Of a stretch of 64,000 bases of DNA, positions 22,170-60,899 are shown piece by piece; position 1 is the first letter of the stretch; every line of letters starts with the position of its first letter. The DNA lies in the IMG/VR virus record IMGVR_UViG_3300020178_000002, positions 124,001 through 188,000 of that record; one strand, 5' to 3'. The translations under genes were made by a program, and so were the position numbers. A model generated the notes under the pieces. That model ran no database searches, was not told the DNA's origin, and worked only from the letters and a program-made list of their open reading frames with translations.

Positions 22170-22212
22170 GTTTATAGTCTCCATGCATTATTAATGTGAA
22201 AGGCATGGAACT

Positions 22213-23049
22213 ATGAACAAAATACAGAGATTAGAAGCAAGAGTAGCTAGGCTTGAAAAAGAGTCTTTTATTTCGGCTCAAAAAGTATGGGATACAGCAA
22301 ACAGCATACTCCCTCAATTAAACAGGCTTAAGGGTGCTGCGAAAGAGCTGATTAGACTAGTGACAGGTGCTATACGCAGTGTTTGGGCAGAGTTGAATTT
22401 AATAGTTCGCAAGAAGAACAAGAAGAAGATACTTGGTTATTTGGAAGCTTCTTTTGAAGAAACTATAAAGAATGCTTTCCAGCCATTTGTCTCGGTGTCA
22501 GAGCCACCAGAGCTTGTGGCATTCTTGCCAGGCAATCTATTAGGTTCTACTTTTAGGTTCAAGAATAGGAAGTATCAGCTTAAAGAGTTATTAAGGCATG
22601 ATGCTGTGACAGGTCAAGGTGCTTACAATGCATATAATGAGTGGGTCACAGAGTATGGGTTATACTTGGACTATATGATGGATAAGTACCCAAGACCAGA
22701 CAGCAAAGTGGGCAAGAAGGTTGTTTATCAGATGATGGAGAACCTGAAAATAGGGAGACTTAGCAAACTTGCTTGGAAGTTTTTTAACATTTGGATAAAG
22801 GTAAGTTCCCAGATTGGTTTAGTGGTTGGTTTAGCGACAGCTTTATCTGCACTTTCTTTAGCTGTGGGTGTGAGAGGGGCAGTGAAAACATTTACTACTC
22901 TCCTTAATAATAAGATAGACAAGGAGATAGGTAAGACAGACTTAGCTAGTAATCCTTTGTTTGACCCTAACAAGACAGCCTCTCAAAGGAAGCTTTCATC
23001 TTTAGCTTTAGTGACCTTAGTGTTAGAGGACATTCACTATTCTTATTAG
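22213..23049 (+). CDS. Leader-tagged protein, distant member of the 27.8-32.7 kb hydrophobic paralog family
   Basis: Leader MNKIQRLEARVARLEKES; AYNEWVTEY matches AYxSWxxDY; hydrophobic stretch; KTAS before a short C-terminal tail. Confidence 0.75.
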   Translation: MNKIQRLEARVARLEKESFISAQKVWDTANSILPQLNRLKGAAKELIRLVTGAIRSVWAELNLIVRKKNKKKILGYLEASFEETIKNAFQPFVSVSEPPELVAFLPGNLLGSTFRFKNRKYQLKELLRHDAVTGQGAYNAYNEWVTEYGLYLDYMMDKYPRPDSKVGKKVVYQMMENLKIGRLSKLAWKFFNIWIKVSSQIGLVVGLATALSALSLAVGVRGAVKTFTTLLNNKIDKEIGKTDLASNPLFDPNKTASQRKLSSLALVTLVLEDIHYSY

Positions 23050-23095
23050 TTTTTTTATTGTTGCCAATAGGCAGAATAAACTAAGGACAAGAGCC

Positions 23096-23431
23096 ATGAC
23101 ATCAGAGAACCAGAATAAAATGATAGAGTTGATATTCAAGATTTTGAGTGTCCTCGTAATTCCGTTTGGGGCATATATAATTTCAATGTCAACAGACATT
23201 AAGTTATTAGAGCAGAAGCTTCAATCTCAAGAAGAGAAAGTTTCCCAGATTATTTTAAAAGTAGAGAAGCTAGATAAAGATGTTGCAGAGGGTTGGAGCA
23301 ACATTAAGCTTAATACTCAAGAAGTACGACAGATGAAAGAGATGATCACAAATCAGTCTCAGATGGTTAGAGAAGTGTATGAGTATGTGCTGAGACAACA
23401 GGGGGGGAGAAGACAAGGCAGAGGAAACTAA
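23096..23431 (+). CDS. Membrane-anchored coiled-coil protein (possible lysis accessory)
   Basis: N-terminal TM (LIFKILSVLVIPFGAYII) followed by a heptad pattern. Confidence 0.6.
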   Translation: MTSENQNKMIELIFKILSVLVIPFGAYIISMSTDIKLLEQKLQSQEEKVSQIILKVEKLDKDVAEGWSNIKLNTQEVRQMKEMITNQSQMVREVYEYVLRQQGGRRQGRGN

Positions 23432-23432
23432 A

Positions 23433-23768
23433 ATGAAAAAGTTCCTCATATTGTCTCTTAGTCTAACTTTATTAATGTGCATTGCTGGTTTAAAAGCTCA
23501 GAGAGTAGAAAAAAAAGAAATTAAGTTGCTTGAATCTCAGGTTGAGGTGGTAGATATAAAGAAGAACCGAGAGGTTGAATCTTTAATGTATGAAACCCAA
23601 GCATTGATGAAAGAAACTTGTAAGCTTCATCAACTGCTTATAAAGGAAAAGACCAATGAGCAACGAAAGTCAAACACCAGTAGAACCACAGAGCGTAGGC
23701 ACACTCACAGAGGAAGAAATGGGTATGATTGCCCAGCTTCGTCAAGCAGCCACCCAACTTCTAAATAA
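23433..23768 (+). CDS. Protein with N-terminal signal/anchor sequence
   Basis: MKKFLILSLSLTLLMCIAG; 3' part overlaps the next gene by about 110 nt. Confidence 0.55.
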   Translation: MKKFLILSLSLTLLMCIAGLKAQRVEKKEIKLLESQVEVVDIKKNREVESLMYETQALMKETCKLHQLLIKEKTNEQRKSNTSRTTERRHTHRGRNGYDCPASSSSHPTSK

Positions 23769-23961
23769 TCTTGGTCAGCTTGAGCTTCGTAAGAGCCAGA
23801 TTGTAGCTCAACTTCAGAGAAATGAGGGGCAAGCCCAACAAATTCTTGTTGATGCTAAGAATCGTTTAGGTATTCCAGAGGGTGCTGCTTGGCAAGTACA
23901 AGAGAATGGTGAAGTTCTCGCTGTGATGCCTTCTGAAGAGGAGACTAGCACAGAGGGCTAA
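23656..23961 (+). CDS. Small coiled-coil hypothetical protein
   Basis: 101 aa, AAGGA SD, followed by a terminator. Confidence 0.75.
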   Translation: MSNESQTPVEPQSVGTLTEEEMGMIAQLRQAATQLLNNLGQLELRKSQIVAQLQRNEGQAQQILVDAKNRLGIPEGAAWQVQENGEVLAVMPSEEETSTEG

Positions 23962-23992
23962 TACTTTAATTGACCCTTTTATCTAGTGTTTT

Positions 23993-24035
23993 AAGAGCTC
24001 TATTGCCATCATGTTGGTAGTAGAGCTTTTTTTTT
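23993..24035 (+). terminator. Intrinsic terminator
   Basis: AAGAGCTCTATTGCCA / TGGTAGTAGAGCTTTT stem plus T run. Confidence 0.85.
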
Positions 24036-24072
24036 GTTTATTGATAGCCTTCTTATAAGATAAAGAAAGGCT

Positions 24073-24597
24073 ATGGTAATGAAAAAAGAGATTGAAAAAT
24101 TAAAAGAAAAGGCAGACCTTAGTTTGCATAGGAAAAGTAATATCTCTGTTCTCATAGAAGAGTTTAAAGAGATTACCATGACCTTAGCAGCAGATGTTCA
24201 TACTGAGAGGAATATGTTTGAGTTAAGGCAGTATCAGCATTTGATTGATCTGCTCAATAGCATTAGAAAAAGAAACTCTCTGATAGAAAGGCAAACCAAA
24301 CTACCTTTCTACAATCTGGTTCAAGCATACCATCTATCTTTATACTTCACTTCATTAAGATATGTCCTAAAAGATAACAAGTCTCCAGAATTTGAGAAAA
24401 TAGACGAGATCATGGAAGATGTGGACTTTATTTTAGAAGAAGGAAAAAAAGTCATTTCAAAGTTCCATCACCAGATGCTTGAAAGAAAAGCAAATGAAAC
24501 AAAGCAAGCAATCATAAAAAGGCTTTCCAGAATAGACCGATTATTAAATAGGTTTATGAGAAAGAAAGCAGCAGAACTGTCTAACTCAAAGCTGTAG
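24073..24597 (+). CDS. Helical hypothetical protein
   Basis: 174-aa ORF; C-terminal KKAA motif. Confidence 0.7.
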   Translation: MVMKKEIEKLKEKADLSLHRKSNISVLIEEFKEITMTLAADVHTERNMFELRQYQHLIDLLNSIRKRNSLIERQTKLPFYNLVQAYHLSLYFTSLRYVLKDNKSPEFEKIDEIMEDVDFILEEGKKVISKFHHQMLERKANETKQAIIKRLSRIDRLLNRFMRKKAAELSNSKL

Positions 24598-24606
24598 GGT
24601 ATTAGT

Positions 24607-25977
24607 ATGTCGCATGGTTGGTACAATAGTAGAAGTCCTTGGCCTCTACCACCTAAAAACACAGTAGCTGTTTCTCCTTTTAAAAAAGGAGAGATTGATG
24701 TCAGGTGGGATAACCCATCTCTCCTTCATGGTAACGAGGGCTGGATTATAAGAGGTGTAAATATATACCGCTCTAGTAACTCTGATAGAGGGATGTATCG
24801 GAGAGTTAATGTAGTTCCTGTTGGTGGTGGTCTATATAGAGATCAAATGCATACATGGACAGTACATGAAGAAGTGGTTGAGGGTTCTGCATGGATTAGT
24901 TTTGGAGATCAAGCAGAAGACCCTTATAGGTTTCAAACTAAGTTCCCTATAGCCAAACTTAATGGTGTGCATGAAGCAGGTGATTGCTCTAAAGATGTTG
25001 TAGTCACAATAGATGGAGAGGTAGTTCCTGTTTCTATGGTTCTTGGAGAGCTAAGACAAGTCATCTTGTATTATCTAGGTGTAGAGACTGACAATGCTAT
25101 TACTTTGAGAAAAGAAGCGAAGCTTGAGATAACAGAGAACTCTGTTGTTAAAGTAAGTTATCTTGCATATGACCCTAGCAGCAGGCTGGGTGTGGGTGTA
25201 GACAGAAGAGACTTCTATCGACTAACTACAGTTGCAGAAGATCCCCTAACAGGCAGACTTCACGAAACACCTTTAGATCAGTGTCAGCCTTTCTCAGATA
25301 GAGAGGTTGAAAAGATAGACTATATGTGGAGAGAAGGTATCCGAAGAAACAATTGGATATTAGAGCAAGGTGGTGAGAGAGTAAAGCTCTTTACTAGAAA
25401 GCAAGTAGGAGAGCCTTGTTTCTGTACTGCTTTCAACAGGGAAACCTTAGCTTACTCAAAGCAACCAGACAGTCTTTGCAAGATTTGTTTCGGTGTTGGT
25501 ATCAAGGGTGGCTATGAAGGTCCTTATGATATAATCATAGCTACAGATGAGACAGAGAAAAGAATTGTTCAGGAAGACAAGGGTCGGAGAAAAGAACACA
25601 GCTATGAGGTCTGGATAGGGCCTAGTCCTATTGTTTCTCAGAAAGACTTCATTGTTAAAGTGAACAATGACAGATACTCTATTGGTGCTGTGAGATACCC
25701 ATCTAACAGGGGTAATATTCTACAACAGCATTTTAACATAGCTTATTTAGACAGTGGAGACATTAGATATAACTTCCCTATAGAGGGAGTGCCTGTCTAT
25801 TGGGCAAAGACTCAATATGGCTATTGGCCTCAAAGAGATACTTACACAGCTCGTTCTGATGCAAAGTATCCTTTGGTTCAAGACACAGCTTACCCTACGG
25901 GGTCAAACAGACCAGATGTTGCTGACGCTTTGGAGAATAAAGGCAGGACAGCGACATGGGAAAATCAAAACTATTAG
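24607..25977 (+). CDS. Putative neck/head-closure protein with N-terminal FN3-like region
   Basis: IDVRWDNP...GVNIYRS and FYRLTTV (FN3-like); CFC...CKICFGVGIKGGY motif that I associate with large-myovirus neck proteins. Confidence 0.5.
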   Translation: MSHGWYNSRSPWPLPPKNTVAVSPFKKGEIDVRWDNPSLLHGNEGWIIRGVNIYRSSNSDRGMYRRVNVVPVGGGLYRDQMHTWTVHEEVVEGSAWISFGDQAEDPYRFQTKFPIAKLNGVHEAGDCSKDVVVTIDGEVVPVSMVLGELRQVILYYLGVETDNAITLRKEAKLEITENSVVKVSYLAYDPSSRLGVGVDRRDFYRLTTVAEDPLTGRLHETPLDQCQPFSDREVEKIDYMWREGIRRNNWILEQGGERVKLFTRKQVGEPCFCTAFNRETLAYSKQPDSLCKICFGVGIKGGYEGPYDIIIATDETEKRIVQEDKGRRKEHSYEVWIGPSPIVSQKDFIVKVNNDRYSIGAVRYPSNRGNILQQHFNIAYLDSGDIRYNFPIEGVPVYWAKTQYGYWPQRDTYTARSDAKYPLVQDTAYPTGSNRPDVADALENKGRTATWENQNY

Positions 25978-25986
25978 GAGAATAAA

Positions 25987-26799
25987 ATGAAAAGAACAAT
26001 AAGAGAACTTGAATCTAGGATTGCTAGACTCGAGAAACATTCATCAAAGAAAACTGCTATGAAGATAATTCACAGAGAGTTGATAGAATACCTGAAAAAG
26101 AAAAATCTTAAGAATGTGGGTAAGAGTGAGCCACTAGAATATGGTGGGCTATCGAGAAAAATAGGATTTGAATTTACGCTTATCCTTAACGACAATGAAT
26201 ACGAGGAGATGACTAAGTTCTTCAATAAGAATAAAAAATATAATAATGAGATAGTCATCAACGATGATGCTGTTGACGACATTATTGAACACCATTTAGA
26301 TGAAGACGAATACTTTGCACCTAGTAATGCTAGATACTCAGGGGGTAGTCCTTTTTGCATTCTTTCCCTATATAAAAATGGGTTGTTTACTCTTACAGTC
26401 GAAATGACTGTTCATAAGAAAAAAACTCCAAAGATTCCTACACCCCTTCAAAAGATTAACTTAGGGATAGGGAAAACTGTTTTTGATATCAAGAAATTGA
26501 CAACAGACTTGTGGATGCTTTTAAAAGACCAAATTGCATTCAAGCTAGAATCAATGGGTAGGGAAGAAGAAGAGCTAGAAGACCTTGCAAATCAGTATAT
26601 GATGAAAGTCCGTTTAGTTATGGATGCTGATGGGTTCTATTTTTTAAGGGTTAAGTCAGGAAGAAATCACTATATTCTTGACATGGAAGACACAGAAAAA
26701 CATGAGATTACAAACTCCAGAGGAAGATACACACAGAAAGCTCTAGAAAGACACCTAGACTTAAACTATGACGACTACACAAGATGGAAAGTAAAATGA
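25987..26799 (+). CDS. Leader-tagged hypothetical protein
   Basis: MKRTIRELESRIARLEKHSSKKTA leader; AGGAG SD. Confidence 0.8.
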   Translation: MKRTIRELESRIARLEKHSSKKTAMKIIHRELIEYLKKKNLKNVGKSEPLEYGGLSRKIGFEFTLILNDNEYEEMTKFFNKNKKYNNEIVINDDAVDDIIEHHLDEDEYFAPSNARYSGGSPFCILSLYKNGLFTLTVEMTVHKKKTPKIPTPLQKINLGIGKTVFDIKKLTTDLWMLLKDQIAFKLESMGREEEELEDLANQYMMKVRLVMDADGFYFLRVKSGRNHYILDMEDTEKHEITNSRGRYTQKALERHLDLNYDDYTRWKVK

Positions 26800-27230
26800 A
26801 AAGAACAGCACATGAAATAATTAGAAGTCTTGAACTTAGAGTAGCTAGACTTGAGAAGCAATCATCACATACAACATATAAGTTAAGTCCAGTTAGACCT
26901 GGACTTAAGAAGTACTTAGAAAATAAACTTAAGAGCATCCTTAGCGAAAGTGGCTATGGTGAAGATTCTTTTGAGGGGGTTGACAGAGTATTTCTTCAGT
27001 GGGATTTAGGAAATAGCTGGGGTGCAGATAACTACTTTGCAATTGGAGTAGACTCAGGTGCAGATACCTTTAGACTTATTTTGGATGATCATAAACCCAG
27101 TGACTTTGGAGATATAGATCCTTATGATGGAGATCCCAGAGGGCCTATTGATTGGACTCCTAAAAAAGTAAACCAAACTAAGCTAATGGATGCACTAGAA
27201 GAATACGATAATGATCTTTGGGAGATCTGA
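26796..27230 (+). CDS. Leader-tagged hypothetical protein
   Basis: Start moved to ATG 26796 (ATGA overlap); MKRTAHEIIRSLELRVARLEKQSS. Confidence 0.8.
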   Translation: MKRTAHEIIRSLELRVARLEKQSSHTTYKLSPVRPGLKKYLENKLKSILSESGYGEDSFEGVDRVFLQWDLGNSWGADNYFAIGVDSGADTFRLILDDHKPSDFGDIDPYDGDPRGPIDWTPKKVNQTKLMDALEEYDNDLWEI

Positions 27231-27790: not shown

Positions 27791-27846
27791 TATTCCATTT
27801 ATATCACCCTTAGCTTGTAAAAAGTGTAATCAGCGAGGGTTATATA

Positions 27847-28947
27847 ATGAATAAAGTATCTGCACAGCAAATCAGATCTCTTGAGGTCAGAATAGCTAGG
27901 CTTGAAAAAGAAGCTGGCTTTCAAGAGTTTATGGAAAGTGTCTCTAGTACATTTAAAAGCATAGTTAACATTCCTAAAAACATGGTGATTAGGATAATAA
28001 ATGCTTTTAAAGAAATTTTTACAACTGTAGAACTGTCATTAGAAGACGAAGAAAAAACAATTGAAAATGCACTTGGCTTTTTATTGGGTTCTCGCATCTT
28101 TAGAGCAATGGCTGGAGTCATAACAACAACAGATGATTTGCCTACGATTGTTAAATTCAATAGGAAGCAGCCTTTAAAGTCTACATTCACGGGTGGGCTT
28201 GCAGGAAAGGCTAAGGTTCAATTAAAGAACCTTATTAAGCGTTATAATGAAACAAACCAGACAAGAATGAAGTCTGCCTATCTTTCATGGTATTCAGATT
28301 TCAAGCACATCCTAAACCCAAAAATTAAAGAAGTTGAGGGTGTTGAATTTGCACTTCGAGAAATCAAGAAGGTCTCAAAGTTAGCATATAGGTTCTTGTC
28401 TTCAATCATCTCTGTATTAGGTGGTGTTGTTGCTATTAAAGGGACAGTGATCTCAACTCTGCTATTTATACTAGGTAGGATCTTTTTGCAGAAGTATGGT
28501 TTTCCAGTAGGAAGACCTAGTGAATGGACTCAAAATGAAGTTGTTTTTTCAAAGGTCACTGTTGAACCCGTAAATGCTACTATACATAGGAATGTAATAG
28601 ACGTTACCAGAGATAGATATAGTGATTATAAGAAACTTTCTCCTATACAAAAGCAGATTTTTGTTGAAAAAATACATGCTAAGGTAGAACAACACCCAAT
28701 GAAAAATTGGCAACCAGATTCAGCAGCTAACCTTCAAGATGTTAAGGATTGGATTAGATGGAAGCCTATTCAGTTTACCACAGCAATCTTGACACCTATT
28801 TTAGCACTCATTGAAACAATTATGTACAAGTGGGTGATTAAGACAGACGAATATGATGAAATGGTAAAAGAGCTAGAATCAAGAAATAAGAAAGCTTCTC
28901 AATACCCAACACTCTCTTATTTAACTCAGATTTTAGAAGGCAGGTGA
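27847..28947 (+). CDS. Leader-tagged hydrophobic paralog 1
   Basis: MNKVSAQQIRSLEVRIARLEKEAG; STFTGG; two hydrophobic segments; KKASQYP tail. Confidence 0.85.
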   Translation: MNKVSAQQIRSLEVRIARLEKEAGFQEFMESVSSTFKSIVNIPKNMVIRIINAFKEIFTTVELSLEDEEKTIENALGFLLGSRIFRAMAGVITTTDDLPTIVKFNRKQPLKSTFTGGLAGKAKVQLKNLIKRYNETNQTRMKSAYLSWYSDFKHILNPKIKEVEGVEFALREIKKVSKLAYRFLSSIISVLGGVVAIKGTVISTLLFILGRIFLQKYGFPVGRPSEWTQNEVVFSKVTVEPVNATIHRNVIDVTRDRYSDYKKLSPIQKQIFVEKIHAKVEQHPMKNWQPDSAANLQDVKDWIRWKPIQFTTAILTPILALIETIMYKWVIKTDEYDEMVKELESRNKKASQYPTLSYLTQILEGR

Positions 28948-28950
28948 GAC

Positions 28951-31564: not shown

Positions 31565-31615
31565 TATCTTATTTATCATTAGCTTCCTGTGAAAAAAACA
31601 CAGGGGGCTGATGAT

Positions 31616-31747
31616 ATGACAAGATACCAGATGAAAAGATTAGAGATGAGGATTTCCAGAAAACTCGAAAGGAAGTCCAAACTTCAACTTCAGCGTATCT
31701 ATCAGAGATTAGCTTCTTTAGAAAAAGAGGTTAAATCCAATGAATAA
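31616..31747 (+). CDS. 43-aa peptide made of two leader-like motifs (not in the ORF track)
   Basis: MTRYQMKRLEMRISRKLERKSKLQLQRIYQRLASLEKEVKSNE; AGGGGG SD; own TA-N5-TTTAT motif. Confidence 0.65.
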   Translation: MTRYQMKRLEMRISRKLERKSKLQLQRIYQRLASLEKEVKSNE

Positions 31748-39163: not shown

Positions 39164-39292
39164 AATTTCTTCCTTATCTTTTTATTTTAAAGACTCTAAC
39201 CATAAATAAGATACAAATCCTAGTTATTAGCACTCTTTCCTTATCCTATAGTTTATTTATTGTATAAGATAAGAAAAAAATAGGAGAAGAAA

Positions 39293-40195
39293 ATGAAAGT
39301 CAACTTCAAAGGAAGAGAGGTCTCTCTAACAACCGTTGAAAACTACGCTTCAGACAAGAGACATCCCGACCACAAAGACGCAGTTTCGTTCTTAAAGAAG
39401 AGTGAGAACGAAAAAAAGCCCTCACAGCAGAAGAAGCAGGTTGGATTCGACAACTACAAAAGACAGGGTGTTTCCGAATTGAGAGACCCTAAGAAGCTCC
39501 AAGAAATAGAGAGCCTCGCAAAGAAGCTAAAAGTGAAGCCAAATGCAGACGATGCTCATATGTCAGAAAGTTTGGTGCGTTCTGAAGGAGTTTTCAACGA
39601 CTACTCTTTGCAAAATGCAGGGGCTGAGAAGATATTTGAACCAGAGATGGAGGGAGAACTTCAAGATCTCCTTTATCCTGATGAAGCCCAAGTACATGAC
39701 TATGATGTGTACCACTTCGGAAAGATCAAAGTCCCCACTTTAAAAGAGCTTGAGTCTGCATATGAGGCAGATCTAGAAGCTGGTAAGTACGACAATGTTT
39801 ATGAAAAAGACCACGAAGCGGTGATCAAATATGTTAGGAAGAATTTTGAAGACATTAAAGCAGCCTTCGAGAAACAAAACCAAATTCGTGAGTTAAGGCA
39901 GCAGATCGAATCTGAAAAGAATGATGTACAAGAACGAGCCGAGACAAGATCAGACCAGCTAAAGAAGTTGATCGAGGTTTCTGAAAGCCTTGAAGACCTA
40001 AAGATGTTTGAGGATGAGATAGTAGAGTTGTCAAAGACTTATCTGGAAGGCGAGTCTCTTCTATCAGACAAGTCACTTGAAAAAACATTCAAGAAAAAGA
40101 GGAAAGGTCTTAAAAAGAATGCCTCTTTGAAGATAGCTTCCTATGTTCTCTCTCATATTAAAGAAGAGATAAAGAGCCTTAAGACCACCTTGTAA
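39293..40195 (+). CDS. Charged helical protein, probable head-internal protein
   Basis: K/E-rich; C-terminal KNASLKIAS tail; TA-N5-TTTAT upstream. Confidence 0.6.
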   Translation: MKVNFKGREVSLTTVENYASDKRHPDHKDAVSFLKKSENEKKPSQQKKQVGFDNYKRQGVSELRDPKKLQEIESLAKKLKVKPNADDAHMSESLVRSEGVFNDYSLQNAGAEKIFEPEMEGELQDLLYPDEAQVHDYDVYHFGKIKVPTLKELESAYEADLEAGKYDNVYEKDHEAVIKYVRKNFEDIKAAFEKQNQIRELRQQIESEKNDVQERAETRSDQLKKLIEVSESLEDLKMFEDEIVELSKTYLEGESLLSDKSLEKTFKKKRKGLKKNASLKIASYVLSHIKEEIKSLKTTL

Positions 40196-40270
40196 ATCTC
40201 CACTCTCTTTTAGATGATAGACTCTTTATAATTCACCTGAAGCGACAAACACAGCTAAGGAGGATTAAAG

Positions 40271-41374
40271 ATGTTTCATCATTTAACAATGGCCGTAAGA
40301 GATAGGATGATTAAAGAGTTAAAGACATACTGGCAAGATCACCCTAGATATGAAACCCTTGCTAAAAACATACAGGGGAAATATGCTTTTGATGAAAGGC
40401 CACAGTTTGGAATGGTAGTTAAAACTTCTGGAGCAAGCAATGTGGTATTGAGCCCAGATAACTTTATAGGTCACATAAAAGGCTTTACTACTCTTGCAAA
40501 AGTTAAGGGTAAAAAGAGTGTCTCTATTGAGTGGGTCAAGGAAGACAGAAACACAAAAGCTCAAGAGGGTATCTACCACATACAAGTACAAAAAGACTCT
40601 ATGGTTGAAGATCCTAATGCATATCTTTTTGTGATTCAAAGATATGTTTCACGAAAAGAGTCTGCACCTTTGTTTACAGATCCAAGCACAATAGAACTAA
40701 ACTATGTTCCTTTTGCTGACTCTTTAAGAATAAGAGAAGCCCCTTCTGGGAGGGTTTTAGGGGCTTCTGAGTATGCTATTAATGGTTCTACTATTACATT
40801 ACTAGAAGAAGTGCAAAGAGGCTTATCTTTAAGTGTGGAGTATACTAGCAAAGATGATTTCTTAGAAGGCCCTTTCAGTGTTTGTCCAGACCATGTTTAC
40901 AGGAACATCATTCCAGGCATAATGATTTCAGTAGGCAGGTGGATAGAAGCAGGGGATGAGCAGATAATAGTTGTGACAGAAAACTTAGAGCTTATTGCAA
41001 GAGAATATGGTGGCAGGTGGGATATAAGTGTAGACATAGACTTAGTTGCAAGAGATGTTCATTCTCAGGCAGACATATCTGATAGAACTGTTGTTTGGCT
41101 TTGGTCAACTTTAAGACCGAAGCTTGCTAATATGGGTCTTGAGATGTCGGATGTGAGTTTGGGTGGCGAGGGTGAAGAAGTATATGATGAGAATGGTGAT
41201 GATTACTTCTACACCGCTAGTATAAGCTTAAGCATACAAGCGGATTGGTTTATTCATTTCCCAGTTCTTATACCTATTAGAGGGGGTGCTGTGGACAGCA
41301 TTGCAGTAGAACAAATAGACTCACCTGTTGTTGGACTTGGGAACACCAACAGCTTCATTCAGAGGTTGATGTAA
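40271..41374 (+). CDS. Putative tail terminator/completion-like structural protein
   Basis: Just upstream of the sheath; C-terminal ISVDIDLVARD...YFYTASISLSIQADW pattern; AAGGAGG SD. Confidence 0.45.
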   Translation: MFHHLTMAVRDRMIKELKTYWQDHPRYETLAKNIQGKYAFDERPQFGMVVKTSGASNVVLSPDNFIGHIKGFTTLAKVKGKKSVSIEWVKEDRNTKAQEGIYHIQVQKDSMVEDPNAYLFVIQRYVSRKESAPLFTDPSTIELNYVPFADSLRIREAPSGRVLGASEYAINGSTITLLEEVQRGLSLSVEYTSKDDFLEGPFSVCPDHVYRNIIPGIMISVGRWIEAGDEQIIVVTENLELIAREYGGRWDISVDIDLVARDVHSQADISDRTVVWLWSTLRPKLANMGLEMSDVSLGGEGEEVYDENGDDYFYTASISLSIQADWFIHFPVLIPIRGGAVDSIAVEQIDSPVVGLGNTNSFIQRLM

Positions 41375-46998: not shown

Positions 46999-47051
46999 TA
47001 CTTTCTTTATTAAAGGATCATTCTTAGTTTAAGATTAACTAGGAGTGATCC
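46997..47051 (+). promoter_or_regulatory. TA-N5-TTTAT motif followed by a 15-bp hairpin occluding the SD
   Basis: GGATCATTCTTAGTT (47015-47029) pairs with AACTAGGAGTGATCC (47037-47051), which contains AGGAG. Confidence 0.7.
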
Positions 47052-47054
47052 AAA

Positions 47055-47525
47055 ATGTTAGAAAGAAAATTAAGAAACCTTTTTCTGAGGGTTGCTAAAT
47101 TAGAAGCAGCTTCAGAAGAATCTGCATTCTTTGATAACCCTCTTAAAAAGAACGTTAGAGAGTTCGCAGAGTCAGAAGCTATCTCTAACGATCTGGAAGT
47201 TGCTCAGAATGCAACTCATGATGTAGGGCCTAAATCTCCCTTACTTATGAGAAGCGAAGCTCTTGTCGCTCCACCAACTCCTTCCGAGATAAAGAAGAAG
47301 CCAGGTGGGTCAGAGTTCTCTACTTTAAATCAATTGGTTATTGAGACAGAAGAAAAAGTACCTGTTCAAAAACCAAAAGGTTCAGAACCACCACCAGCAT
47401 CTTTGGCCGAAGGTAAGGAAAAAGATCTTGTTGAAAAGGCTAATGAGAGAGAAGAAGTCTCCAAAAGAGAGAAACTCAAGGCCATCAAAGAAGTAATGAA
47501 AAAGAAGTCTAAGTATAGGAGATAA
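47055..47525 (+). CDS. Leader-tagged low-complexity protein
   Basis: MLERKLRNLFLRVAKLEAAS. Confidence 0.75.
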   Translation: MLERKLRNLFLRVAKLEAASEESAFFDNPLKKNVREFAESEAISNDLEVAQNATHDVGPKSPLLMRSEALVAPPTPSEIKKKPGGSEFSTLNQLVIETEEKVPVQKPKGSEPPPASLAEGKEKDLVEKANEREEVSKREKLKAIKEVMKKKSKYRR

Positions 47526-49285: not shown

Positions 49286-49364
49286 ATCTTATTCTCCTTT
49301 GTTTACTTGGTTAGTATATTTATATTTTGTTTATATCTAAACCAAGAAAAAAAGGAGGTGGTCA

Positions 49365-49985
49365 ATGAGTAATGAGAAAGATATGGGTTTGTTGCCTATC
49401 ATGAGTCCCTTATACAATCTAAGGGAGATTACTAAACAAATGGCTCTACTAGAAGACCATTTGAACCACCCTCGAAAAAGATGTCCTGACTGTATCCGAA
49501 AACATTTTTTAACAATAGAAGCTCTTTTTGAAGAAGCAGTCTCCTTAGACAAAACATTTGAATATGGTGAATACTTGGATGGCAAAGCCCAGACTATGAG
49601 AGATATGCAAGCTCATTGGTTAGATAATGATGGTGATGATAGCTATCTAGAGCTTGCACAAGGACTCAGGGCAATCCGAAAAGACTTTGCCCCTATTTGT
49701 TTTGATGTTAGAAAAATGGCAAGTACAAGAAGTCACATCTGTTCTGTCTATAAAGGTCGGCTTTTTTTTTCAACAAAAACCACAACAGAGGTTGAGGAAG
49801 AGAAAATAGAGTCTCTTGTTAGAAAAAACCCTACAAAAAAGCCACCTCGAAAAGACCTTCGAAAAAATAGGTATGAAATGCCAGATCAAGATTTAGAGGG
49901 TACAGGCAGAGGCGATGGTGGAGACAGGGATTTGTCTCGCAGAGACCATAAGATGGCTAGGAACATTCTTAAAAGATGGTGTTGA
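49365..49985 (+). CDS. Two-part hypothetical protein with H/CxxC/H metal-binding N-domain
   Basis: NLREITKQMALLEDHL...RCPDCIRKHFLTIE; RKMAS linker; basic C-terminal part. Confidence 0.75.
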   Translation: MSNEKDMGLLPIMSPLYNLREITKQMALLEDHLNHPRKRCPDCIRKHFLTIEALFEEAVSLDKTFEYGEYLDGKAQTMRDMQAHWLDNDGDDSYLELAQGLRAIRKDFAPICFDVRKMASTRSHICSVYKGRLFFSTKTTTEVEEEKIESLVRKNPTKKPPRKDLRKNRYEMPDQDLEGTGRGDGGDRDLSRRDHKMARNILKRWC

Positions 49986-54133: not shown

Positions 54134-54169
54134 AGTCTTGCCCTCTACGATATGAAAGGACTATGCCTT

Positions 54170-56545: not shown

Positions 56546-56563
56546 TAGGAAAGGAAGTATATT

Positions 56564-57442
56564 ATGAGTAATACAGTTGATAATTCAGTAAAACAAAAGA
56601 TCATTAGCGACTACATCAAGACCCCTCAAGGTCGTGCAAAGCTAGCTGCTTCAATGACTCAACCTCTTCGTCTTCGCCGTGACTATACAAGCGTTGGTCG
56701 TAAGACCTTCCTTGTTGAGCAACTTCCTGATGGTGCGTTGCCTATTTACGACAAAGACCCAGACGTAACAGCTTTCGTAGTTGGTGAAGAAGGCGAGAAC
56801 ATTCTTGCTATCACCAAGCCTCGTCGTGTTATCTTCCCTCTCTTTGAGATTGCTTCTAACCCTGAGATTCCTTTAACTCAGATCAAGGAAAGACGCTTCG
56901 ATCTTATCGAGAGAGCACAGGATCTTGCTAGAGCACAAATTCAGGCTGCTGAAGACGAGCGTGTATTCGCTATTCTTGACGCAGTTGCAGCTAATGGTTT
57001 CGACAGCGTTTCTGGTCAAACCAATGCTGACATTCCTGTTATCGCTCCTCTTAATGGTGCTGTTCTTGCTGACGCATACAGCCTAATTGAGAGACATGAC
57101 CTTAGAGTTGCCCGTGTATTTATGAATGCTAGAGACTATGCTGACATTCGTAAGTTCGGTCGTGACATTCTCGATATCGAGAGTCAAGCAGCCCTTCTCA
57201 AGACAGGTCTACAAGCAACTCTTTGGGGTGCTCAAATCATCACAAGTCGTCTTGTTCCTGTTGGTACAGTTTATGTTTGTTGTGAGCCAGAAATGTTCGG
57301 TCGTATCCCTGTTCGTACAGAGTTGACTGTTCTTTCTGCTGACGATCCAAAAGCTCGTACAATCGGCTTCTCTTGCTTCGAGAATCTAGGTATCGGTGCT
57401 TATAACCCTCGTGGTCTTGCTAGACTTACTGTTACTCGCTAA
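56564..57442 (+). CDS. Major capsid protein (HK97 fold)
   Basis: 292 aa; PLFEIASNPEI...RRFDLIERAQ...IQAAEDERVF, VFMNARDYADIRK, LWGAQIITSRLVPVG; strongly biased codons; terminator follows. Confidence 0.88.
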   Translation: MSNTVDNSVKQKIISDYIKTPQGRAKLAASMTQPLRLRRDYTSVGRKTFLVEQLPDGALPIYDKDPDVTAFVVGEEGENILAITKPRRVIFPLFEIASNPEIPLTQIKERRFDLIERAQDLARAQIQAAEDERVFAILDAVAANGFDSVSGQTNADIPVIAPLNGAVLADAYSLIERHDLRVARVFMNARDYADIRKFGRDILDIESQAALLKTGLQATLWGAQIITSRLVPVGTVYVCCEPEMFGRIPVRTELTVLSADDPKARTIGFSCFENLGIGAYNPRGLARLTVTR

Positions 57443-57492
57443 TCATTAGCTAAGTAAATGACCTAGAGTCTAGGTCAAGGGTTATCGAAATT

Positions 57493-57527
57493 AAACCTCA
57501 ACTTCTTCTGGGAGTTGGGGTTTTTTT
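57493..57527 (+). terminator. Intrinsic terminator of the capsid operon
   Basis: AAACCTCAACTTC / GGAGTTGGGGTTT stem plus T run. Confidence 0.85.
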
Positions 57528-57628
57528 ATTTATAGTCCTCCTTAGCTTTGATACTACTTAAAACTTGATCATTCCAAACCCTAGTATTTCGTTTATAGCT
57601 CCCATAGACAAAACAAGGAGTAAAAAAA

Positions 57629-58231
57629 ATGAAGCTGTTCAATACAAAAAGAAGCCTAGCAATACATCCAGGTAGTCTTAGACTAAACCACACCAAGTTC
57701 TTAAACGATTGGTCTAGAAGTAAAGCAGGACCTAAAGATTTTGTTATCTTCTTTAAAGGTGGAAAGTACCTTAAAGTCTCTTTCAACCAGAACTCTCCTC
57801 ACTATAAGAGATCTGTACCGAAGTTTGACAGAAATAAGGTGTTTGGTCTTGCTACTAAAATTCCAAGAGATGGGAAATGGCAATTTGTAGCTTATGTTTA
57901 TGACAATGAACATAATCTGAGACAACTAACTGTCACAGGAGAAACCACTGCCAGAAAAGCTCTCAAAAAAGGTATTCTTGAAATGAGAGAGTATTATGTT
58001 CGCATAAACGGACTCCTTTTAAGAAGTCCAGAAAAAAAACTAGAAGATGCCCTCAAGTCACATGATTGGTGGCACATGATGAGCGATGACCATAGAGTAT
58101 GGAGAGCTGGTGAGAGTAGTATGGAGAAAATCAAGAGCCTGTTAGATAAAGTGGACGATGCCACAGGTAAAGAACTTTGGTTAAAGTATGCACCAGATCA
58201 GTTTAAAGGTTATTATAGTAACAACTCTTAA
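57629..58231 (+). CDS. Hypothetical protein with C-terminal HDW...SDD motif
   Basis: LKSHDWWHMMSDDHRVWRAG; AAGGAG SD; TA-N5-TTTAT upstream. Confidence 0.7.
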   Translation: MKLFNTKRSLAIHPGSLRLNHTKFLNDWSRSKAGPKDFVIFFKGGKYLKVSFNQNSPHYKRSVPKFDRNKVFGLATKIPRDGKWQFVAYVYDNEHNLRQLTVTGETTARKALKKGILEMREYYVRINGLLLRSPEKKLEDALKSHDWWHMMSDDHRVWRAGESSMEKIKSLLDKVDDATGKELWLKYAPDQFKGYYSNNS

Positions 58232-58249
58232 CTTTAAGGAGATGACTCA

Positions 58250-58786
58250 ATGAGGATCTTTCTGTTTTTACTATTCTTGACCCTTCCCTTATCTGCTCAT
58301 GCAGAAGAAGAACCTATACATAGACCTTGGGAAGCTAGTCTTGGTAATACCCAAATGTTTATTGGCTGGTATAAAAAGGGTTCTTACCCTGTACCAACTT
58401 CTTCTGCCACTTTAATTCTTTCAAGAGAAGTGGTTTTTGACTTCTCATTGTGGGCTGTATTCAATCTCCCTCTTAATTCTAACAGAAGAGTTACAGAAGA
58501 GGGTTTACTTGTAGAGAGCCAAACACCACCTACTTTTATGTTAGGTCTTAGTTATGAGTTTATCAGGTATGGAATGAGTGAGGGTAGGAGTCTAGGTCTT
58601 GATGCAGGATTTTCTGTAGGTAGACCTCTAACTCTTGAGGGTCAACTCTTTCCTGTAGGTGCGTTTAGATTAAAACTCCTTACAAAACAAGATAGCTCTA
58701 TGTATGCTGGAATAACAACCTCACCTTATAACCCAGAGGGTGATTTGGTTTGGGGCTTGATCTCTGGCATGGGATATAAGTTTTAA
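58250..58786 (+). CDS. Secreted, probable outer-membrane beta-barrel protein
   Basis: Signal peptide ending AHA; alternating amphipathic strands; C-terminal GMGYKF. Confidence 0.6.
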   Translation: MRIFLFLLFLTLPLSAHAEEEPIHRPWEASLGNTQMFIGWYKKGSYPVPTSSATLILSREVVFDFSLWAVFNLPLNSNRRVTEEGLLVESQTPPTFMLGLSYEFIRYGMSEGRSLGLDAGFSVGRPLTLEGQLFPVGAFRLKLLTKQDSSMYAGITTSPYNPEGDLVWGLISGMGYKF

Positions 58787-58852
58787 AAAAAAGTACCCCC
58801 CTTTAATTAATCAGATAACAATAAGTATCTATTTTATTAAAGGAGAAAAATT

Positions 58853-59113
58853 ATGAATGAGAAGATTGTATTAAGTATTTTGTTTGTTCTAGGTATTGCA
58901 GCACTTGTCTATGGTCTTAATAGAGAGAGCCTTGAAAGTGCTGTAGGTGAGGACAAGACATACAGCATTAGCTGTGAAACCCCAAAGGGTTGGGTAGAGT
59001 ACAAGACCCACAGAAAACCTTTTGAAGCAAGTTGGAGGCGAGGTGGGGTTTGGTATTTTGAAACCCTAGAGGGTAAGAACATTACCTCTACCAAGTGTCA
59101 CAGCGAAGAATAA
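58853..59113 (+). CDS. Small membrane-anchored protein
   Basis: N-terminal TM; two Cys; AAGGAG SD; variant CCCCCC-N9-TCAGATAA upstream (58796-58818). Confidence 0.7.
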   Translation: MNEKIVLSILFVLGIAALVYGLNRESLESAVGEDKTYSISCETPKGWVEYKTHRKPFEASWRRGGVWYFETLEGKNITSTKCHSEE

Positions 59114-59198
59114 TAAGTTATCTCTCTAAAATAAGAAACCCCATAGGTTTTTTTGATAATAGGCTTATTAGCAGTCATTAATCAAAGGAGTGTAAAAG

Positions 59199-59765
59199 AT
59201 GAAGAAATCTGCAAATGAAATTATTCAAAATCTTGAAACCAGAGTAGCCCAGCTTGAAAAGAAGTCTGCTCGAAAGTTCTCCCTATCCGCAGACTACCAT
59301 TATGTGTTTAAGCGTAGTTATTATGCTAAGTCTGTAGAGCGAGTAGACCATTCTAAGGTTCTCTTTGAGGGCCCTAAAAAGAAGTTTATTCCTCAAGGTT
59401 GGTCATATGGAGTTGATGAGATCAATTCTTTTGTTGAGAGAGATTTGATTCAGGAGATTGGTAAGATCCAAAAAGAGATCGAGGAAGTTTTTTATGCAAG
59501 TGGAGTTGACCCAACAGAGTTAAGGGAAGATTTCGAGGACTCTGGCAACAAGTTTGAGTGGGTGTTGGTTGCTCAAGGTCGTGCGTATGAGGGAGAGGTT
59601 TTGAAACTCGCCTATGTACGCATTAAAGATAAGACCTACAACTTCTATGTAGCACCCTCAATCGAAATTAAGGTTCTCAACACAAAAGGCAGGGCTGTTA
59701 AGGCAAACTACATCCTTAATACCCTAGCATCCGAGCTAGGTATGAGAACTGTCCGTATCGGTTAA
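59199..59765 (+). CDS. Leader-tagged hypothetical protein
   Basis: MKKSANEIIQNLETRVAQLEKKSA; AAGGAG SD. Confidence 0.8.
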   Translation: MKKSANEIIQNLETRVAQLEKKSARKFSLSADYHYVFKRSYYAKSVERVDHSKVLFEGPKKKFIPQGWSYGVDEINSFVERDLIQEIGKIQKEIEEVFYASGVDPTELREDFEDSGNKFEWVLVAQGRAYEGEVLKLAYVRIKDKTYNFYVAPSIEIKVLNTKGRAVKANYILNTLASELGMRTVRIG

Positions 59766-59808
59766 GAACGTCTAGTAGGTTTGGACTATGAAAGTGGTCA
59801 GCTAAATT

Positions 59809-59847
59809 AAGCCCTGCTACCCTTATTGGGTGGTGGGGGTTTTTTTT
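59809..59847 (+). terminator. Intrinsic terminator (direct-repeat copy 1)
   Basis: AAGCCCTGCTACCC-TTATT-GGGTGGTGGGGGTTT plus T run. Confidence 0.85.
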
Positions 59848-59902
59848 GTTTGTTTATAGTCCTAGGTGTCGTGTACCCTCACCAATACCATAAGGATTAG
59901 CT

Positions 59903-60802
59903 ATGAGAAGAATAGCATCAGAAATACTCAGAGAATTAGAGATAAGAGTAGCCCATTTAGAGGGTATGAGCCAAGATGACATGAGAAAGTCTATTGAGGT
60001 TGTGATAGAAAAAACTCCATCAAAGGTAAGAATAGATTATGTTGAGTTCCCTAAAACCCAAGAAGAGTTTTTAGAGATAGAAGCAAAGAACTTACCTGTT
60101 GTTTTTTATAATTGCCCTCTTGGAACAGAGATGGCAAGCCGATTAGATTTATTTAAGTCAGGCTTTAATCCTGTTGTGCAAGCAAGGCTTGCAGACAGAA
60201 AAAGCAAAGATATTGGTGAGGAAGTAGATATTAATCTCAAAGACCTTTTAAGGTCAAATTTTAACAATGGTACTCGATATGTAGGAAAACAACGTCTTAT
60301 GAAAGTAGGTTTGAAAAAACTGTTGGGTGTCAATCTTTATGAGAGAGGTCAGATTCTAGATGGGATGGAGGTGAGTTCTGCAAATATGTGGTGTGGGCCT
60401 AAAGGTTGTATTACACCATTACACCTCGACACAATTAACAACTTAGCATGGAACATATACGGACAAAAAACATGGTTTTTAGTGAGCCCAGAAGATATGT
60501 ACCACAATGCTTACTTAGAGCCATTCAAAGAGCCTTATGAAGAAGACTACAAAGGTGATTGGGATAGGAATGATAATAAAAGATCCCCTACTTTTTCAAA
60601 GATGACAGGGAATCCTTTAAAAAGCTTCGATAAGTTCCCGAAAGCTAGGGATATAAAATACCACAAGGTTGTTTTTCGGGAAAATGAGATACTGTATCTT
60701 CCTGCCTATTGGGGGCATTATGTTAAGACCGACTCTGACTCTTTGATGATTAACCACTGGTATGATGAAGTGCCAATTATTCTTAGATCTGAAAGAAAAT
60801 AA
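59903..60802 (+). CDS. Leader-tagged JmjC/cupin Fe(II)-2-oxoglutarate oxygenase
   Basis: NMWCG...TPLHLD (HxD), GQKTW, ILYLPAYWGHYV (distal H), INHW; leader MRRIASEILRELEIRVAHLEG. Confidence 0.88.
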   Translation: MRRIASEILRELEIRVAHLEGMSQDDMRKSIEVVIEKTPSKVRIDYVEFPKTQEEFLEIEAKNLPVVFYNCPLGTEMASRLDLFKSGFNPVVQARLADRKSKDIGEEVDINLKDLLRSNFNNGTRYVGKQRLMKVGLKKLLGVNLYERGQILDGMEVSSANMWCGPKGCITPLHLDTINNLAWNIYGQKTWFLVSPEDMYHNAYLEPFKEPYEEDYKGDWDRNDNKRSPTFSKMTGNPLKSFDKFPKARDIKYHKVVFRENEILYLPAYWGHYVKTDSDSLMINHWYDEVPIILRSERK

Positions 60803-60810
60803 ATTAGAAG

Positions 60811-60850
60811 AAGCCCTGCTACCCTTATTGGGTGGTAGGGGTTTTTTTTT
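60811..60850 (+). terminator. Intrinsic terminator (direct-repeat copy 2)
   Basis: AAGCCCTGCTACCC-TTATT-GGGTGGTAGGGGTTT plus T run; one mismatch to copy 1. Confidence 0.85.
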
Positions 60851-60899
60851 GTTTATTAACTTGTGTTATAAGTAAAGAGAATAACACAAGGGGATAATC

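What the first reader, a model, noticed from the sequence alone, without database searches (positions are those of the whole stretch)
22174..60890. Recurrent RBS-occluding hairpins coupled to the late motif: a translational lock on late and cargo genes
Seen: stems whose 3' arm contains or abuts the SD or start codon: 22174-22214, 24044-24074 (ATAGCCTT/AAGGCTAT), 27799-27847, 31581-31609 (AGCTTCCTGTG/CACAGGGGGCT), 39240-39289, 40230-40267, 47015-47051 (15 bp), 49293-49358, 59149-59189, 59857-59899 and 60860-60890 (CTTGTGTTAT/ATAACACAAG). The sequences differ but the architecture is the same, and in the clearest cases the loop lies ~20-27 nt after TTTAT. Established: T4 genes e, soc and I-TevI are silenced on early read-through mRNA by such hairpins and freed when a late promoter starts inside them. 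Inference: the same logic is applied here to many genes, keeping cargo untranslated until heads assemble.
Basis: partly seen in the sequence, partly recalled or inferred. Interest (0 to 1): 0.72.

Follow-up and report, generated by a model that had tools for sequence, protein, structure and literature searches.

The report
Promoter-coupled hairpins masking ribosome sites
In this uncultured 312-kb marine jumbo phage and its relatives, about a third to a half of the internal late promoters are followed by an RNA hairpin that hides the next gene's ribosome binding site. This resembles a known phage T4 device, but it is used far more widely and mostly between late genes.

Summary
Eight of the 11 named stems fold far better than shuffles (z -2.9 to -9.3), two are weak, and one sits in a different promoter class and is not significant.

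The "late motif" is a 17-nt promoter-like element, TTnnTAGTYTnTTTATA. It lies 33-56 nt before about 80 genes, including the sheath operon and the capsid (MCP) operon, and it is conserved in relatives that share only 41-43% capsid-protein identity.

In three genomes, the 8-12 nt right after TTTAT are specifically complementary to the gene's own Shine-Dalgarno (SD)/start region:
- Own versus permuted partners: -2.7 kcal/mol, p=4e-10, with 33% of leaders in the top 5%.
- This holds only when the promoter lies downstream of a co-directional gene.
- Divergent promoters, promoter-less junctions and the second (early-like) promoter class show nothing beyond chance.
- Orthologous leaders of one conserved gene keep the hairpin with different sequence and register. 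In one relative the promoter itself lies inside the 5' arm.

This pattern supports an action on read-through transcripts, as in T4 genes e, soc and I-TevI.

Not supported:
- The early-versus-late logic. The hairpins sit mostly at late-to-late junctions, and none of 8 early-to-late junctions has one.
- The "cargo" story.

The transcription start site is unmapped, so relief of masking in promoter-initiated mRNA is inferred, not shown.

The parts
22171..22217 (+). TTTAT (22171-75) directly after a terminator T-run. The stem core is TCCATGC 22180-86 / GCATGGA 22203-09, with outer pairs reaching TTTAT and the AU of the start codon at 22213.
   Evidence: z -3.8; -17.4 kcal/mol; -2.6 if the 5' end is at +13
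24037..24074 (+). TTTAT (24037-41) after a terminator. The stem is ATAGCCTT 24044-51 / AAGGCTAT 24067-74 and masks the SD AAGG and the first ATG at 24073 (a second ATG is at 24079).
   Evidence: (z -3.2)
27798..27847 (+). TTTAT (27798-802), with the upstream stop codon inside the motif (cTTAATAttcca). An imperfect stem ACCCTTAGC / GCGAGGGT plus UUAUAU / AUAUAA covers the SD GAGGG and the A of ATG 27847.
   Evidence: (z -2.9)
31572..31618 (+). TTTAT (31572-76). A 17-bp perfect stem (31575-91 / 31599-615) runs from the AU of TTTAT to the base before ATG 31616 of a 43-aa ORF (31616-31747). The SD GGGGG lies inside the 3' arm.
   Evidence: z -9.3, -25.7 kcal/mol; -8.7 remains with a 5' end at +13
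39240..39295 (+). A long-range stem, CUUAUCCUAU / AUAGGAGAAG, encloses TTTAT (39252-56). The leader downstream of TTTAT is itself unstructured. The intergenic region is divergent.
   Evidence: z -3.3; -1.1 from TTTAT on
40225..40273 (+). TTTAT (40225-29). A weak interrupted stem, AAUUCACCU..GC / GC..AGGAGGAUU, lies over the SD.
   Evidence: (z -2.0)
47006..47057 (+). TTTAT (47006-10), 8 nt after the sheath gene's stop codon. A 15-bp stem (47015-29 / 47037-51, with 2 G-U pairs) has the SD AGGAG in its middle. ATG is at 47055, and the product is K/E-rich.
   Evidence: z -5.8, -21.3 kcal/mol; -11.7 remains at +13
49293..49367 (+). Divergent intergenic region. The 5' arm UCUCCUUU is the antisense of the SD of gene 48635-49285(-), and the 3' arm holds the SD of gene 49365. 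Two TTTAT copies lie in the loop.
   Evidence: (z -3.6)
57592..57631 (+). TTTAT (57592-96). A 5-bp stem GCUCC / GGAGU lies over the SD.
59139..59201 (+). Leader of the other promoter class (CCCC-N-TTGATAA at 59139-59159). The named stem 59149-89 is not significant.
   Evidence: (z -0.9)
59853..59905 (+). TTTAT (59853-57) after a terminator. The stem AGUCCU / AGGAUU lies over the SD and precedes the JmjC/cupin gene.
   Evidence: (z -1.8)
60852..60902 (+). TTTAT (60852-56) after a terminator. A 10-bp stem CUUGUGUUAU / AUAACACAAG abuts and overlaps the SD AAGGGG and precedes the type IB topoisomerase gene.
   Evidence: z -4.1; -13.3; -1.1 at +13

Best explanation
**What it is.** A promoter-coupled mask on the translation initiation region.

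**Parts**
- The late promoter-like element is TTnnTAGTYTnTTTAT(A).
- It is followed in all contexts by a C/T-rich stretch at +6..+13, counted from the first T of TTTAT.
- Where the promoter lies behind a co-directional gene, the 8-12 nt after TTTAT have evolved gene-specific complementarity to that gene's own SD and start codon. The stem often extends into TTTAT itself.

**How it works**
- *Shown:* the complementarity, its coupling to the promoter, its dependence on context, and its conservation across the clade.
- *Inferred:* on RNA that reads through the promoter from upstream, the RNA copy of the promoter-proximal segment folds back on the SD and AUG and blocks 30S binding.
- *Inferred:* RNA started at the promoter itself begins about 7-10 nt after TTTAT, the geometry of a -10-type element. 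It therefore lacks most of the 5' arm and is translated.

**Net effect.** Translation of the gene is tied to its own promoter and insulated from read-through. This is the T4 e/soc/I-TevI principle, but here it is applied to dozens of genes and mainly between late transcription units, so it sets dosage or unit boundaries rather than an early/late switch.
For: **Motif**
- TTTAT peaks 35-54 nt before the ATG. The upstream T..TAG element is conserved.
- TAATAGTYTCTTTAT (<=1 mismatch) occurs 27 and 16 times in two relatives and 0 times in the reversed control.

**Masking above shuffles**
-.

**Context test**
- Co-directional L leaders: dMFE -3.0 to -3.7 kcal/mol against shuffles, with 32% at MFE rank <=0.05.
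- Divergent L leaders: dMFE -0.2 to -0.6, with 7% at rank <=0.05. The difference has p=5e-7 to 5e-5.
- Promoter-less junctions are near chance.

**Partner-permutation test**
- Own duplex -8.96 against -6.01 kcal/mol for permuted partners, p=4.6e-7. Divergent leaders are not significant.
- Third genome: -11.7 against -7.4, p=1.4e-5.

**Where the complementarity lies**
- It is concentrated at +3..+14 (p=4e-10), weaker at +13..+20, and absent in divergent leaders.

**Stems reach the promoter**
- Stems pair with TTTAT more often in the co-directional context.
- Six of 8 distinct orthologous leaders of a conserved 194-aa gene keep an SD-masking hairpin with different sequence and register.
- In L063 the anti-SD CCUC lies upstream of TTTAT, inside the 5' arm.

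**Effect of the assumed 5' end**
- Predicted SD pairing falls from about 0.8 to 0.4-0.5 as the 5' end moves from +5 to +15.
- Seven of 9 window hairpins collapse with a 5' end at +13.

**Polymerase**
- No phage RNA polymerase or sigma factor was found. This is compatible with host polymerase and -10-type geometry.

**Precedent**
- T4, in PMC3014915 and PMC2988022.
Against: - The start site is unmapped. The metatranscriptome contigs are too sparse (depth 2-6) and may include DNA.
- If transcription starts at or just after TTTAT(A), as with T7-like or jumbo-phage non-canonical polymerases, the whole hairpin is also in the promoter's own mRNA.
- The two strongest stems (31616 and 47055) would keep -8.7 and -11.7 kcal/mol with a 5' end at +13.
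- The C-rich anti-SD-like stretch after TTTAT also exists at divergent promoters. Part of the pairing is therefore a by-product of promoter composition.
- Most masks sit at late-to-late junctions. There the benefit of silencing read-through RNA is not obvious.
- Six of 8 leaders that directly follow a terminator carry a hairpin, although read-through should already be low there.
- All structures are predicted, none probed.
- Gene starts come from my own simple caller.
Confidence: 0.45

Rival explanations
1. The hairpin is also part of the promoter's own mRNA, because transcription starts at or just after TTTAT(A). It would act as a 5'-terminal stem-loop that stabilises the late mRNA, sets a low constitutive translation rate, or both.
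For: - Stems begin 1-5 nt after TTTAT.
- The strongest conserved purine after the motif is the A at +5.
- The contiguous 16-17-nt motif resembles the promoters of single-subunit or non-canonical phage polymerases, which reach to +1 (my own knowledge).
- An unrecognised polymerase could hide among the giant ORFans.
- 31616 and 47055 stay masked under any plausible start site.
Against: - Divergent L promoters carry the same motif at the same spacing, yet show no excess structure and no specific complementarity. A 5' stabiliser should not depend on the upstream neighbour.
- Stems extend into TTTAT or across it.
- A mask of -13 to -25 kcal/mol would nearly abolish translation.
Confidence: 0.2
2. 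It is a translational-coupling device. On polycistronic read-through RNA the hairpin loops out the inserted promoter cassette and brings the upstream stop codon, which lies inside the motif (TAA or TAG), next to the downstream start. The terminating ribosome then melts the outer pairs that hold the AUG and re-initiates.
For: - The hairpins occur only in co-directional contexts.
- The upstream stop codon lies 5-10 nt before TTTAT, inside the motif.
- The base of the stem lies at TTTAT on one side and at or next to the ATG on the other.
- Promoter-less junctions have short gaps and need no such loop-out.
Against: - The SD pairs with +6..+14, which a ribosome parked on the stop codon does not reach. 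This is an inference from the known ribosome footprint.
- Six of 8 leaders preceded by a terminator also have hairpins.
- No direct evidence.
Confidence: 0.15
3. It has little or no dedicated function. The pairing is a by-product of a C-rich promoter-proximal stretch meeting a G-rich SD, of mutually complementary divergent SDs, and of the reader having selected the best stems.
For: - The C-rich stretch occurs in all contexts.
- 49293 is exactly such a by-product.
- The class-wide excess of SD pairing over shuffles is modest: 0.46 against 0.37, and 0.53 against 0.46.
- Three of the 11 named stems are weak.
Against: - The partner-permutation test removes generic complementarity and is still highly significant in three genomes.
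- Orthologous leaders keep the hairpin with different sequences.
- The signal depends on context.
Confidence: 0.1
4. They are intercistronic processing or 3'-end stabilising hairpins, of the T7 promoter plus RNase III site type, which serve the upstream mRNA.
For: - The hairpins occur only in co-directional contexts.
- T7 pairs several promoters with RNase III sites (my own knowledge).
- A few stems are 15-17 bp long.
Against: - Most stems are 7-12 bp, too short for RNase III.
- Promoter-less junctions lack them.
- Leaders that already have a terminator upstream still carry them.
- The 3' arm is centred on the SD.
Confidence: 0.07

Closest known systems
Phage T4 RBS-sequestering hairpins with an embedded late promoter (genes e, soc, 49, I-TevI/II/III, segB; mobE of Aeh1)
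   Same: - A stem-loop masks the SD and/or the AUG.
- A compact late promoter lies in or next to the DNA that encodes the 5' arm.
- The structure needs RNA coming from upstream.
- The sequences differ from gene to gene (PMC3014915, PMC2988022).
   Different: - The promoter is different: TTnnTAGTYTnTTTATA rather than TATAAATA.
- It is used at about 30-55% of co-directional late promoters (dozens per genome) rather than at about ten genes.
- It lies mostly at late-to-late junctions, not at early-to-late ones.
- The start sites and the effect on translation are not demonstrated here.
Translational coupling by structure (MS2 coat/replicase-lysis, bacterial operons)
   Same: The downstream initiation site is masked by pairing with upstream RNA, and the arrangement is co-directional only.
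   Different: - The 5' arm lies downstream of the upstream stop codon, not inside the coding region.
- The hairpins are tied to internal promoters and are absent from promoter-less junctions.
5'-terminal stabiliser stem-loops (E. coli ompA leader, T7 phi10 leader; own knowledge)
   Same: The stem starts within a few nucleotides of the presumed 5' end of the mRNA.
   Different: Those do not mask the SD and do not depend on the upstream neighbour. Here, divergent promoters lack the stems.
T7 promoter plus RNase III site modules (own knowledge)
   Same: A phage promoter is immediately followed by an intercistronic hairpin.
   Different: T7 sites are about 20-bp irregular helices outside the SD. 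Here the stems are 7-17 bp and centred on the SD.

Membership tests
T4-type promoter-embedded RBS hairpin | A stem-loop sequesters the SD and/or the start codon. | tested here: met
   - Predicted folds.
- Above shuffles and above permuted partners.
- The structures are predicted, not probed.
T4-type promoter-embedded RBS hairpin | A promoter lies in or directly next to the sequence that encodes the 5' arm. | tested here: met
   - The 5' arm lies at +1..+14 after TTTAT.
- The stem reaches TTTAT in 35/73 co-directional leaders.
- The promoter lies inside the arm in L063.
- Promoter function is itself inferred from motif, position and conservation.
T4-type promoter-embedded RBS hairpin | Transcripts from that promoter start inside or after the 5' arm. 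| not testable with these tools
   - Read laying on metatranscriptome contigs gave depth 2-6 and no pile-ups of 5' ends.
- Sequence gives only bounds: the start must lie before +22.
- Masking is predicted to be relieved from about +13.
T4-type promoter-embedded RBS hairpin | Longer transcripts from upstream traverse the site. | tested here: inconclusive
   - The hairpins are restricted to co-directional contexts.
- One RNA-library contig spans 59651-59881, across TTTAT, but DNA carry-over cannot be excluded.
T4-type promoter-embedded RBS hairpin | The upstream transcripts belong to an earlier temporal class (early or middle versus late). | tested here: not met
   - 36 of 52 strong duplexes lie downstream of another L unit.
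- 0 of 8 early-class-to-L junctions in this genome have one.
- The classes are inferred from motifs only.
5'-terminal mRNA stabiliser stem-loop | Present on the promoter's own transcript whatever the upstream context. | tested here: not met
   Divergent L leaders show no excess structure and no specific complementarity.
Intrinsic terminator | A G+C-rich stem followed by a U-run. | tested here: not met
   The 3' arms are followed by the spacer and the ATG, not by T-runs. True terminators lie upstream of TTTAT at 22137-70, 23993-24036, and before 59853 and 60852.
RNase III processing site (T7 type) | An irregular helix of about two turns (about 20 bp). | tested here: not met
   Most stems are 7-12 bp. 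Only 31575 (17 bp) and 47015 (15 bp) come close.

The most novel reading that the evidence does not exclude
The late promoter of this phage clade is a self-insulating cassette. Its own RNA copy (UUUAU plus the C-rich 8-12 nt that follow) serves as a built-in anti-SD/anti-AUG arm. Every internal promoter can therefore be tuned, by a few substitutions, to silence read-through RNA or to couple it to upstream translation, looping the promoter out between the upstream stop codon and the downstream start. This would be a genome-wide rule for how a 300-kb phage sets protein dosage along long late-gene arrays.
Probability: 0.15. Interest if true: 0.7.

Novelty: new variant of a known kind. Interest (0 to 1): 0.5.

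Why it matters
- If the inferred start sites hold, this is the first case where the T4-style "promoter inside the RBS hairpin" device is a general organising principle rather than a curiosity of a few genes. It would apply to a third to a half of internal late promoters, in at least three genomes that are 41-43% identical in capsid protein.
- It would be used between late units, which points to dosage or unit insulation rather than timing.
- It gives a sequence-level rule for predicting expression units in uncultured jumbo phages: the promoter motif plus complementarity to the gene's own initiation region.
- It yields two new promoter-like motifs for a clade with no cultured member.

Tried and rejected
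- **Start-site mapping.** One read-laying run laid four metatranscriptome runs on 55400-61399. Only short contigs of depth 2-6 came back, with no 5' pile-ups, so it is uninformative.
- **Cultured relatives.** Megablast against phages found nothing. tblastn with the capsid protein found one uncultured huge phage.
- **Transcription machinery.** Pfam models for RNA polymerase beta and beta', T7-like polymerase and sigma-70 region 2 found nothing in the genome. The T7-family control rang nowhere, so that negative is weak. Pfam, PHROGs and PDB scans of all ORFs of 800 aa or more gave tail fibre, baseplate, helicase, ribonucleotide reductase and intein hits, and no polymerase.
- **Archaeal TATA-box reading of TTTATA, with the start about 26 nt downstream in the loop.** Rejected, because in the shortest leaders the SD begins 22 nt after the first T, and because the terminators are bacterial-type stems with T-runs.
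- **Column-wise covariation on a MAFFT alignment of orthologous leaders (A1).** Abandoned, because the stems are in different registers. I used per-sequence folds instead.
- **ATAA/TAAA words in the SD-ATG spacer as partners of TTTAT.** No enrichment.
- **Identity of the strongly masked 47055 gene.** The Atlas gave no family. The product is K/E-rich with low model confidence, and it is not a tail tube.
- **tblastn of the 43-aa ORF.** No homologue in the two relatives.
- **Specific complementarity upstream of the motif (-20..-6).** Not significant as a class.

Full report
**Source and gene calls**

The window is bases 124001-188000 of a 312,136-bp IMG/VR virus record with terminal repeats and 38% G+C, from salt-marsh metagenomes. 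It has no cultured relative.

I called 323 genes with my own Markov-plus-SD caller. SD use is strong, mostly AGGAG-like and 11-14 nt before the ATG. In the window, PHROGs and Pfam identify:
- a 1603-aa tail sheath (42187-46998);
- a head protease (52745-54133);
- a probable capsid gene (54170-55819).

Elsewhere in the genome they identify baseplate J and an Mtd-like fibre.

**The motif**

TTTAT is not random.
- Its distance to the next ATG peaks sharply at 35-54 nt, with 84 sites in those four 5-nt bins against a background of about 5 per bin.
- The sites share an upstream element, giving TTnnTAGTYTnTTTAT(A).
- In co-directional settings the upstream stop codon (TAA or TAG) is part of the motif. 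Elsewhere the motif abuts a terminator T-run.
- The same element, at the same distance, is found in relatives with only 41-43% capsid-protein identity. TAATAGTYTCTTTAT with at most 1 mismatch occurs 27 and 16 times in two of them, and never in the reversed control.
- It precedes the sheath, capsid and fibre operons. PolA and DnaB lie behind neither this motif nor the second class. 'Late promoter' is therefore plausible but inferred.

A second class, CCCC-N8-14-TYGATAA, has 7 distinct sites in the window against 0.2 expected. It fronts small ORFs and looks early.

**The named stems**

Eight of 11 fold far better than 200 dinucleotide shuffles. Two are weak. One (59149) belongs to the second class and is not significant.
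- The best is one my gene caller had missed: a 17-bp perfect stem running from the AU of TTTAT to the base before ATG 31616.
- The 49293 stem is the trivial complementarity of two divergent SDs.

**Class-wide tests**

I folded each leader from the end of TTTAT to ATG+12 and shuffled only the part upstream of the SD.

| Leader class | Mean P(SD paired upstream): observed / shuffled | Rank <=0.05 | MFE rank <=0.05 |
|---|---|---|---|
| L (TTTAT), this genome, n=77 | 0.46 / 0.37 | 12/77 (p=4e-4) | 14/77 |
| Other leaders, this genome | 0.37 / 0.36 | 6.5% | 7.9% |
| Early-like class, this genome | 0.16 / 0.21 | 5.6% | 5.6% |
| L, 375-kb relative | 0.53 / 0.46 | 12% | 25% |
| Other leaders, 375-kb relative | 0.42 / 0.42 | 6.2% | 11% |

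The average structure puts the 5' arm at +2..+14 after TTTAT and the 3' arm at -6..-12 from the ATG.

**The decisive pattern is context**

- L leaders behind a co-directional gene carry the excess: dMFE -3.0 to -3.7 kcal/mol, with 32% at MFE rank <=0.05.
- L leaders in divergent intergenic regions, with the same motif quality and spacing, carry none: dMFE -0.2 to -0.6, with 7% (p=5e-7 to 5e-5).

A shuffle-free control agrees. The duplex between TTTAT+15 nt and the gene's own SD..ATG segment is -8.96 kcal/mol, against -6.01 for other genes' segments in co-directional leaders (p=4.6e-7, with 31.5% in the top 5%). In divergent leaders it is -5.16 against -5.03.

A third genome (297 kb, 47% G+C) repeats the result: -11.7 against -7.4 kcal/mol (p=1.4e-5) for co-directional leaders, and no significant difference for divergent ones.

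Pooling the three genomes, the specific complementarity sits at +3..+14 (p=4e-10). It is weaker at +13..+20 and absent upstream of the motif as a class.

**Conservation**

- Among 21 orthologous L-L pairs, SD pairing correlates (rho 0.44, p=0.049). Among 122 non-L pairs rho is 0.07.
- A conserved 194-aa gene has homologues on 22 viral contigs. Six of 8 distinct leaders keep an SD-masking hairpin (z -2.8 to -7.3) with different sequences and registers.
- In this genome and in L045 the stem includes part of TTTAT.
- In L063 the anti-SD CCUC lies upstream of TTTAT, and the whole motif is inside a -29 kcal/mol 5' arm. That structure can form only on RNA that reads through the promoter.
- More generally, MFE stems pair at least 3 nt of TTTAT with the SD..ATG region in 35/73 co-directional against 11/45 divergent leaders (p=0.012).

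**What this means**

A function on the promoter's own mRNA, such as 5' stabilisation, should not care about the upstream neighbour. A generic intercistronic element should also occur at promoter-less junctions. Neither holds. The data fit an element that acts on read-through RNA and is built from the promoter-proximal sequence, as in T4 e, soc, 49 and I-TevI (PMC3014915, PMC2988022).

**Limits**

- *The start site is unknown.*
  - Metatranscriptome contigs were too thin to show it.
  - Sequence bounds it before +22.
  - Predicted SD pairing drops from about 0.8 to 0.4-0.5 as the assumed 5' end moves from +5 to +15.
  - With +13, a -10-type geometry, 7 of 9 window hairpins collapse, but 31616 and 47055 keep -8.7 and -11.7 kcal/mol.
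  - No phage polymerase or sigma factor was recognised. This weakly favours host polymerase geometry, but it is not proof.
- *A C/T-rich, anti-SD-like stretch at +6..+13 exists at divergent promoters too*. Part of the pairing is therefore built into the promoter.
- *The temporal logic fails.* Strong duplexes lie mostly behind other L units (36 of 52), and none of 8 early-class-to-L junctions has one. The role is therefore more likely insulation or coupling among late units.
- *Nothing supports 'cargo'.* The masked genes are ORFans, a JmjC/cupin protein, a type IB topoisomerase and a pentapeptide-repeat protein.

**Verdict**

The architecture is real, coupled to the promoter, dependent on context and conserved across the clade. 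It is a variant of the T4 device in mechanism, with the relief step and the biological rationale still to be shown.

Noticed in passing
window 13022-13094, 16870-16891, 18166-18186, 18982-19001, 35553-35574(-), 59139-59159; 18 sites genome-wide: A second promoter-like class, CCCC(C)-N8-14-TYGATAA(G/T), lies 34-54 nt before small ORFs. It has 7 distinct sites in the window against 0.2 expected. Its leaders are unstructured (P SD paired 0.16), so it is probably early.
   Followed up: partly
window 55915-55937, and L005/L006/L008/L010/L011 downstream of the capsid gene: A hairpin TACTCAC/GTGAGTA just after the capsid gene is kept in relatives as TACTCTCT/AGAGAGTA, a compensatory change. It does not touch the SD. 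It may be a stabiliser or processing element for the capsid mRNA.
   Followed up: no
window 54134-54169: A conserved stem, GGGCAG..CUUGCCC, lies in the 36-nt gap between the protease and capsid genes. It is also present in all relatives seen, and no promoter motif is there.
   Followed up: no
window 185-9208 (-): A 3007-aa ORF has no Pfam, PHROG or PDB sequence match and a very strong negative GC skew (-0.38 to -0.48).
   Followed up: partly
window 59903-60802 and 60900-62267: A JmjC/cupin-like hydroxylase and a type IB topoisomerase (eukaryote/poxvirus-type catalytic core) are each behind a terminator, the late motif and a hairpin.
   Followed up: partly
G000:240716-243391 (L083) and G000:252721-255843 (L085): The ribonucleotide reductase large subunit and a second 1040-aa protein carry inteins with LAGLIDADG domains.
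   Followed up: no
window 21000-40999: Sigma-70-type promoter-like sites are depleted (36 against 52.6 expected). A few leaders outside the window (PolA region, G000:93040-93118; G000:18770-18842) look sigma-70-like instead.
   Followed up: no
L005, L006, L008, L011 (e.g. L006:4680-4730) and G000:12430-12476: A paralogous leader family, TTTAT-N8-ATAAGTGATCTC..AACCAAUGGAGAA, has a variable C-rich 8 nt followed by a conserved block starting at +13. This may mark the 5' end of the RNA.
   Followed up: no
window 49310-49335: The divergent region carries TATAAATA, the T4 late consensus, on the minus strand as the complement of TATTTATA in front of gene 48635-49285(-). This is probably a coincidence of the AT-rich palindrome-like core.
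   Followed up: no
L034-L036 (2940-3000): Relatives with 60% identical topoisomerase use TTGTAGTCTATTAATA, with TTAAT in place of TTTAT. It is followed by CCCCCCC, complementary to the SD GGAGGGG. The architecture is the same with a variant core.
   Followed up: no
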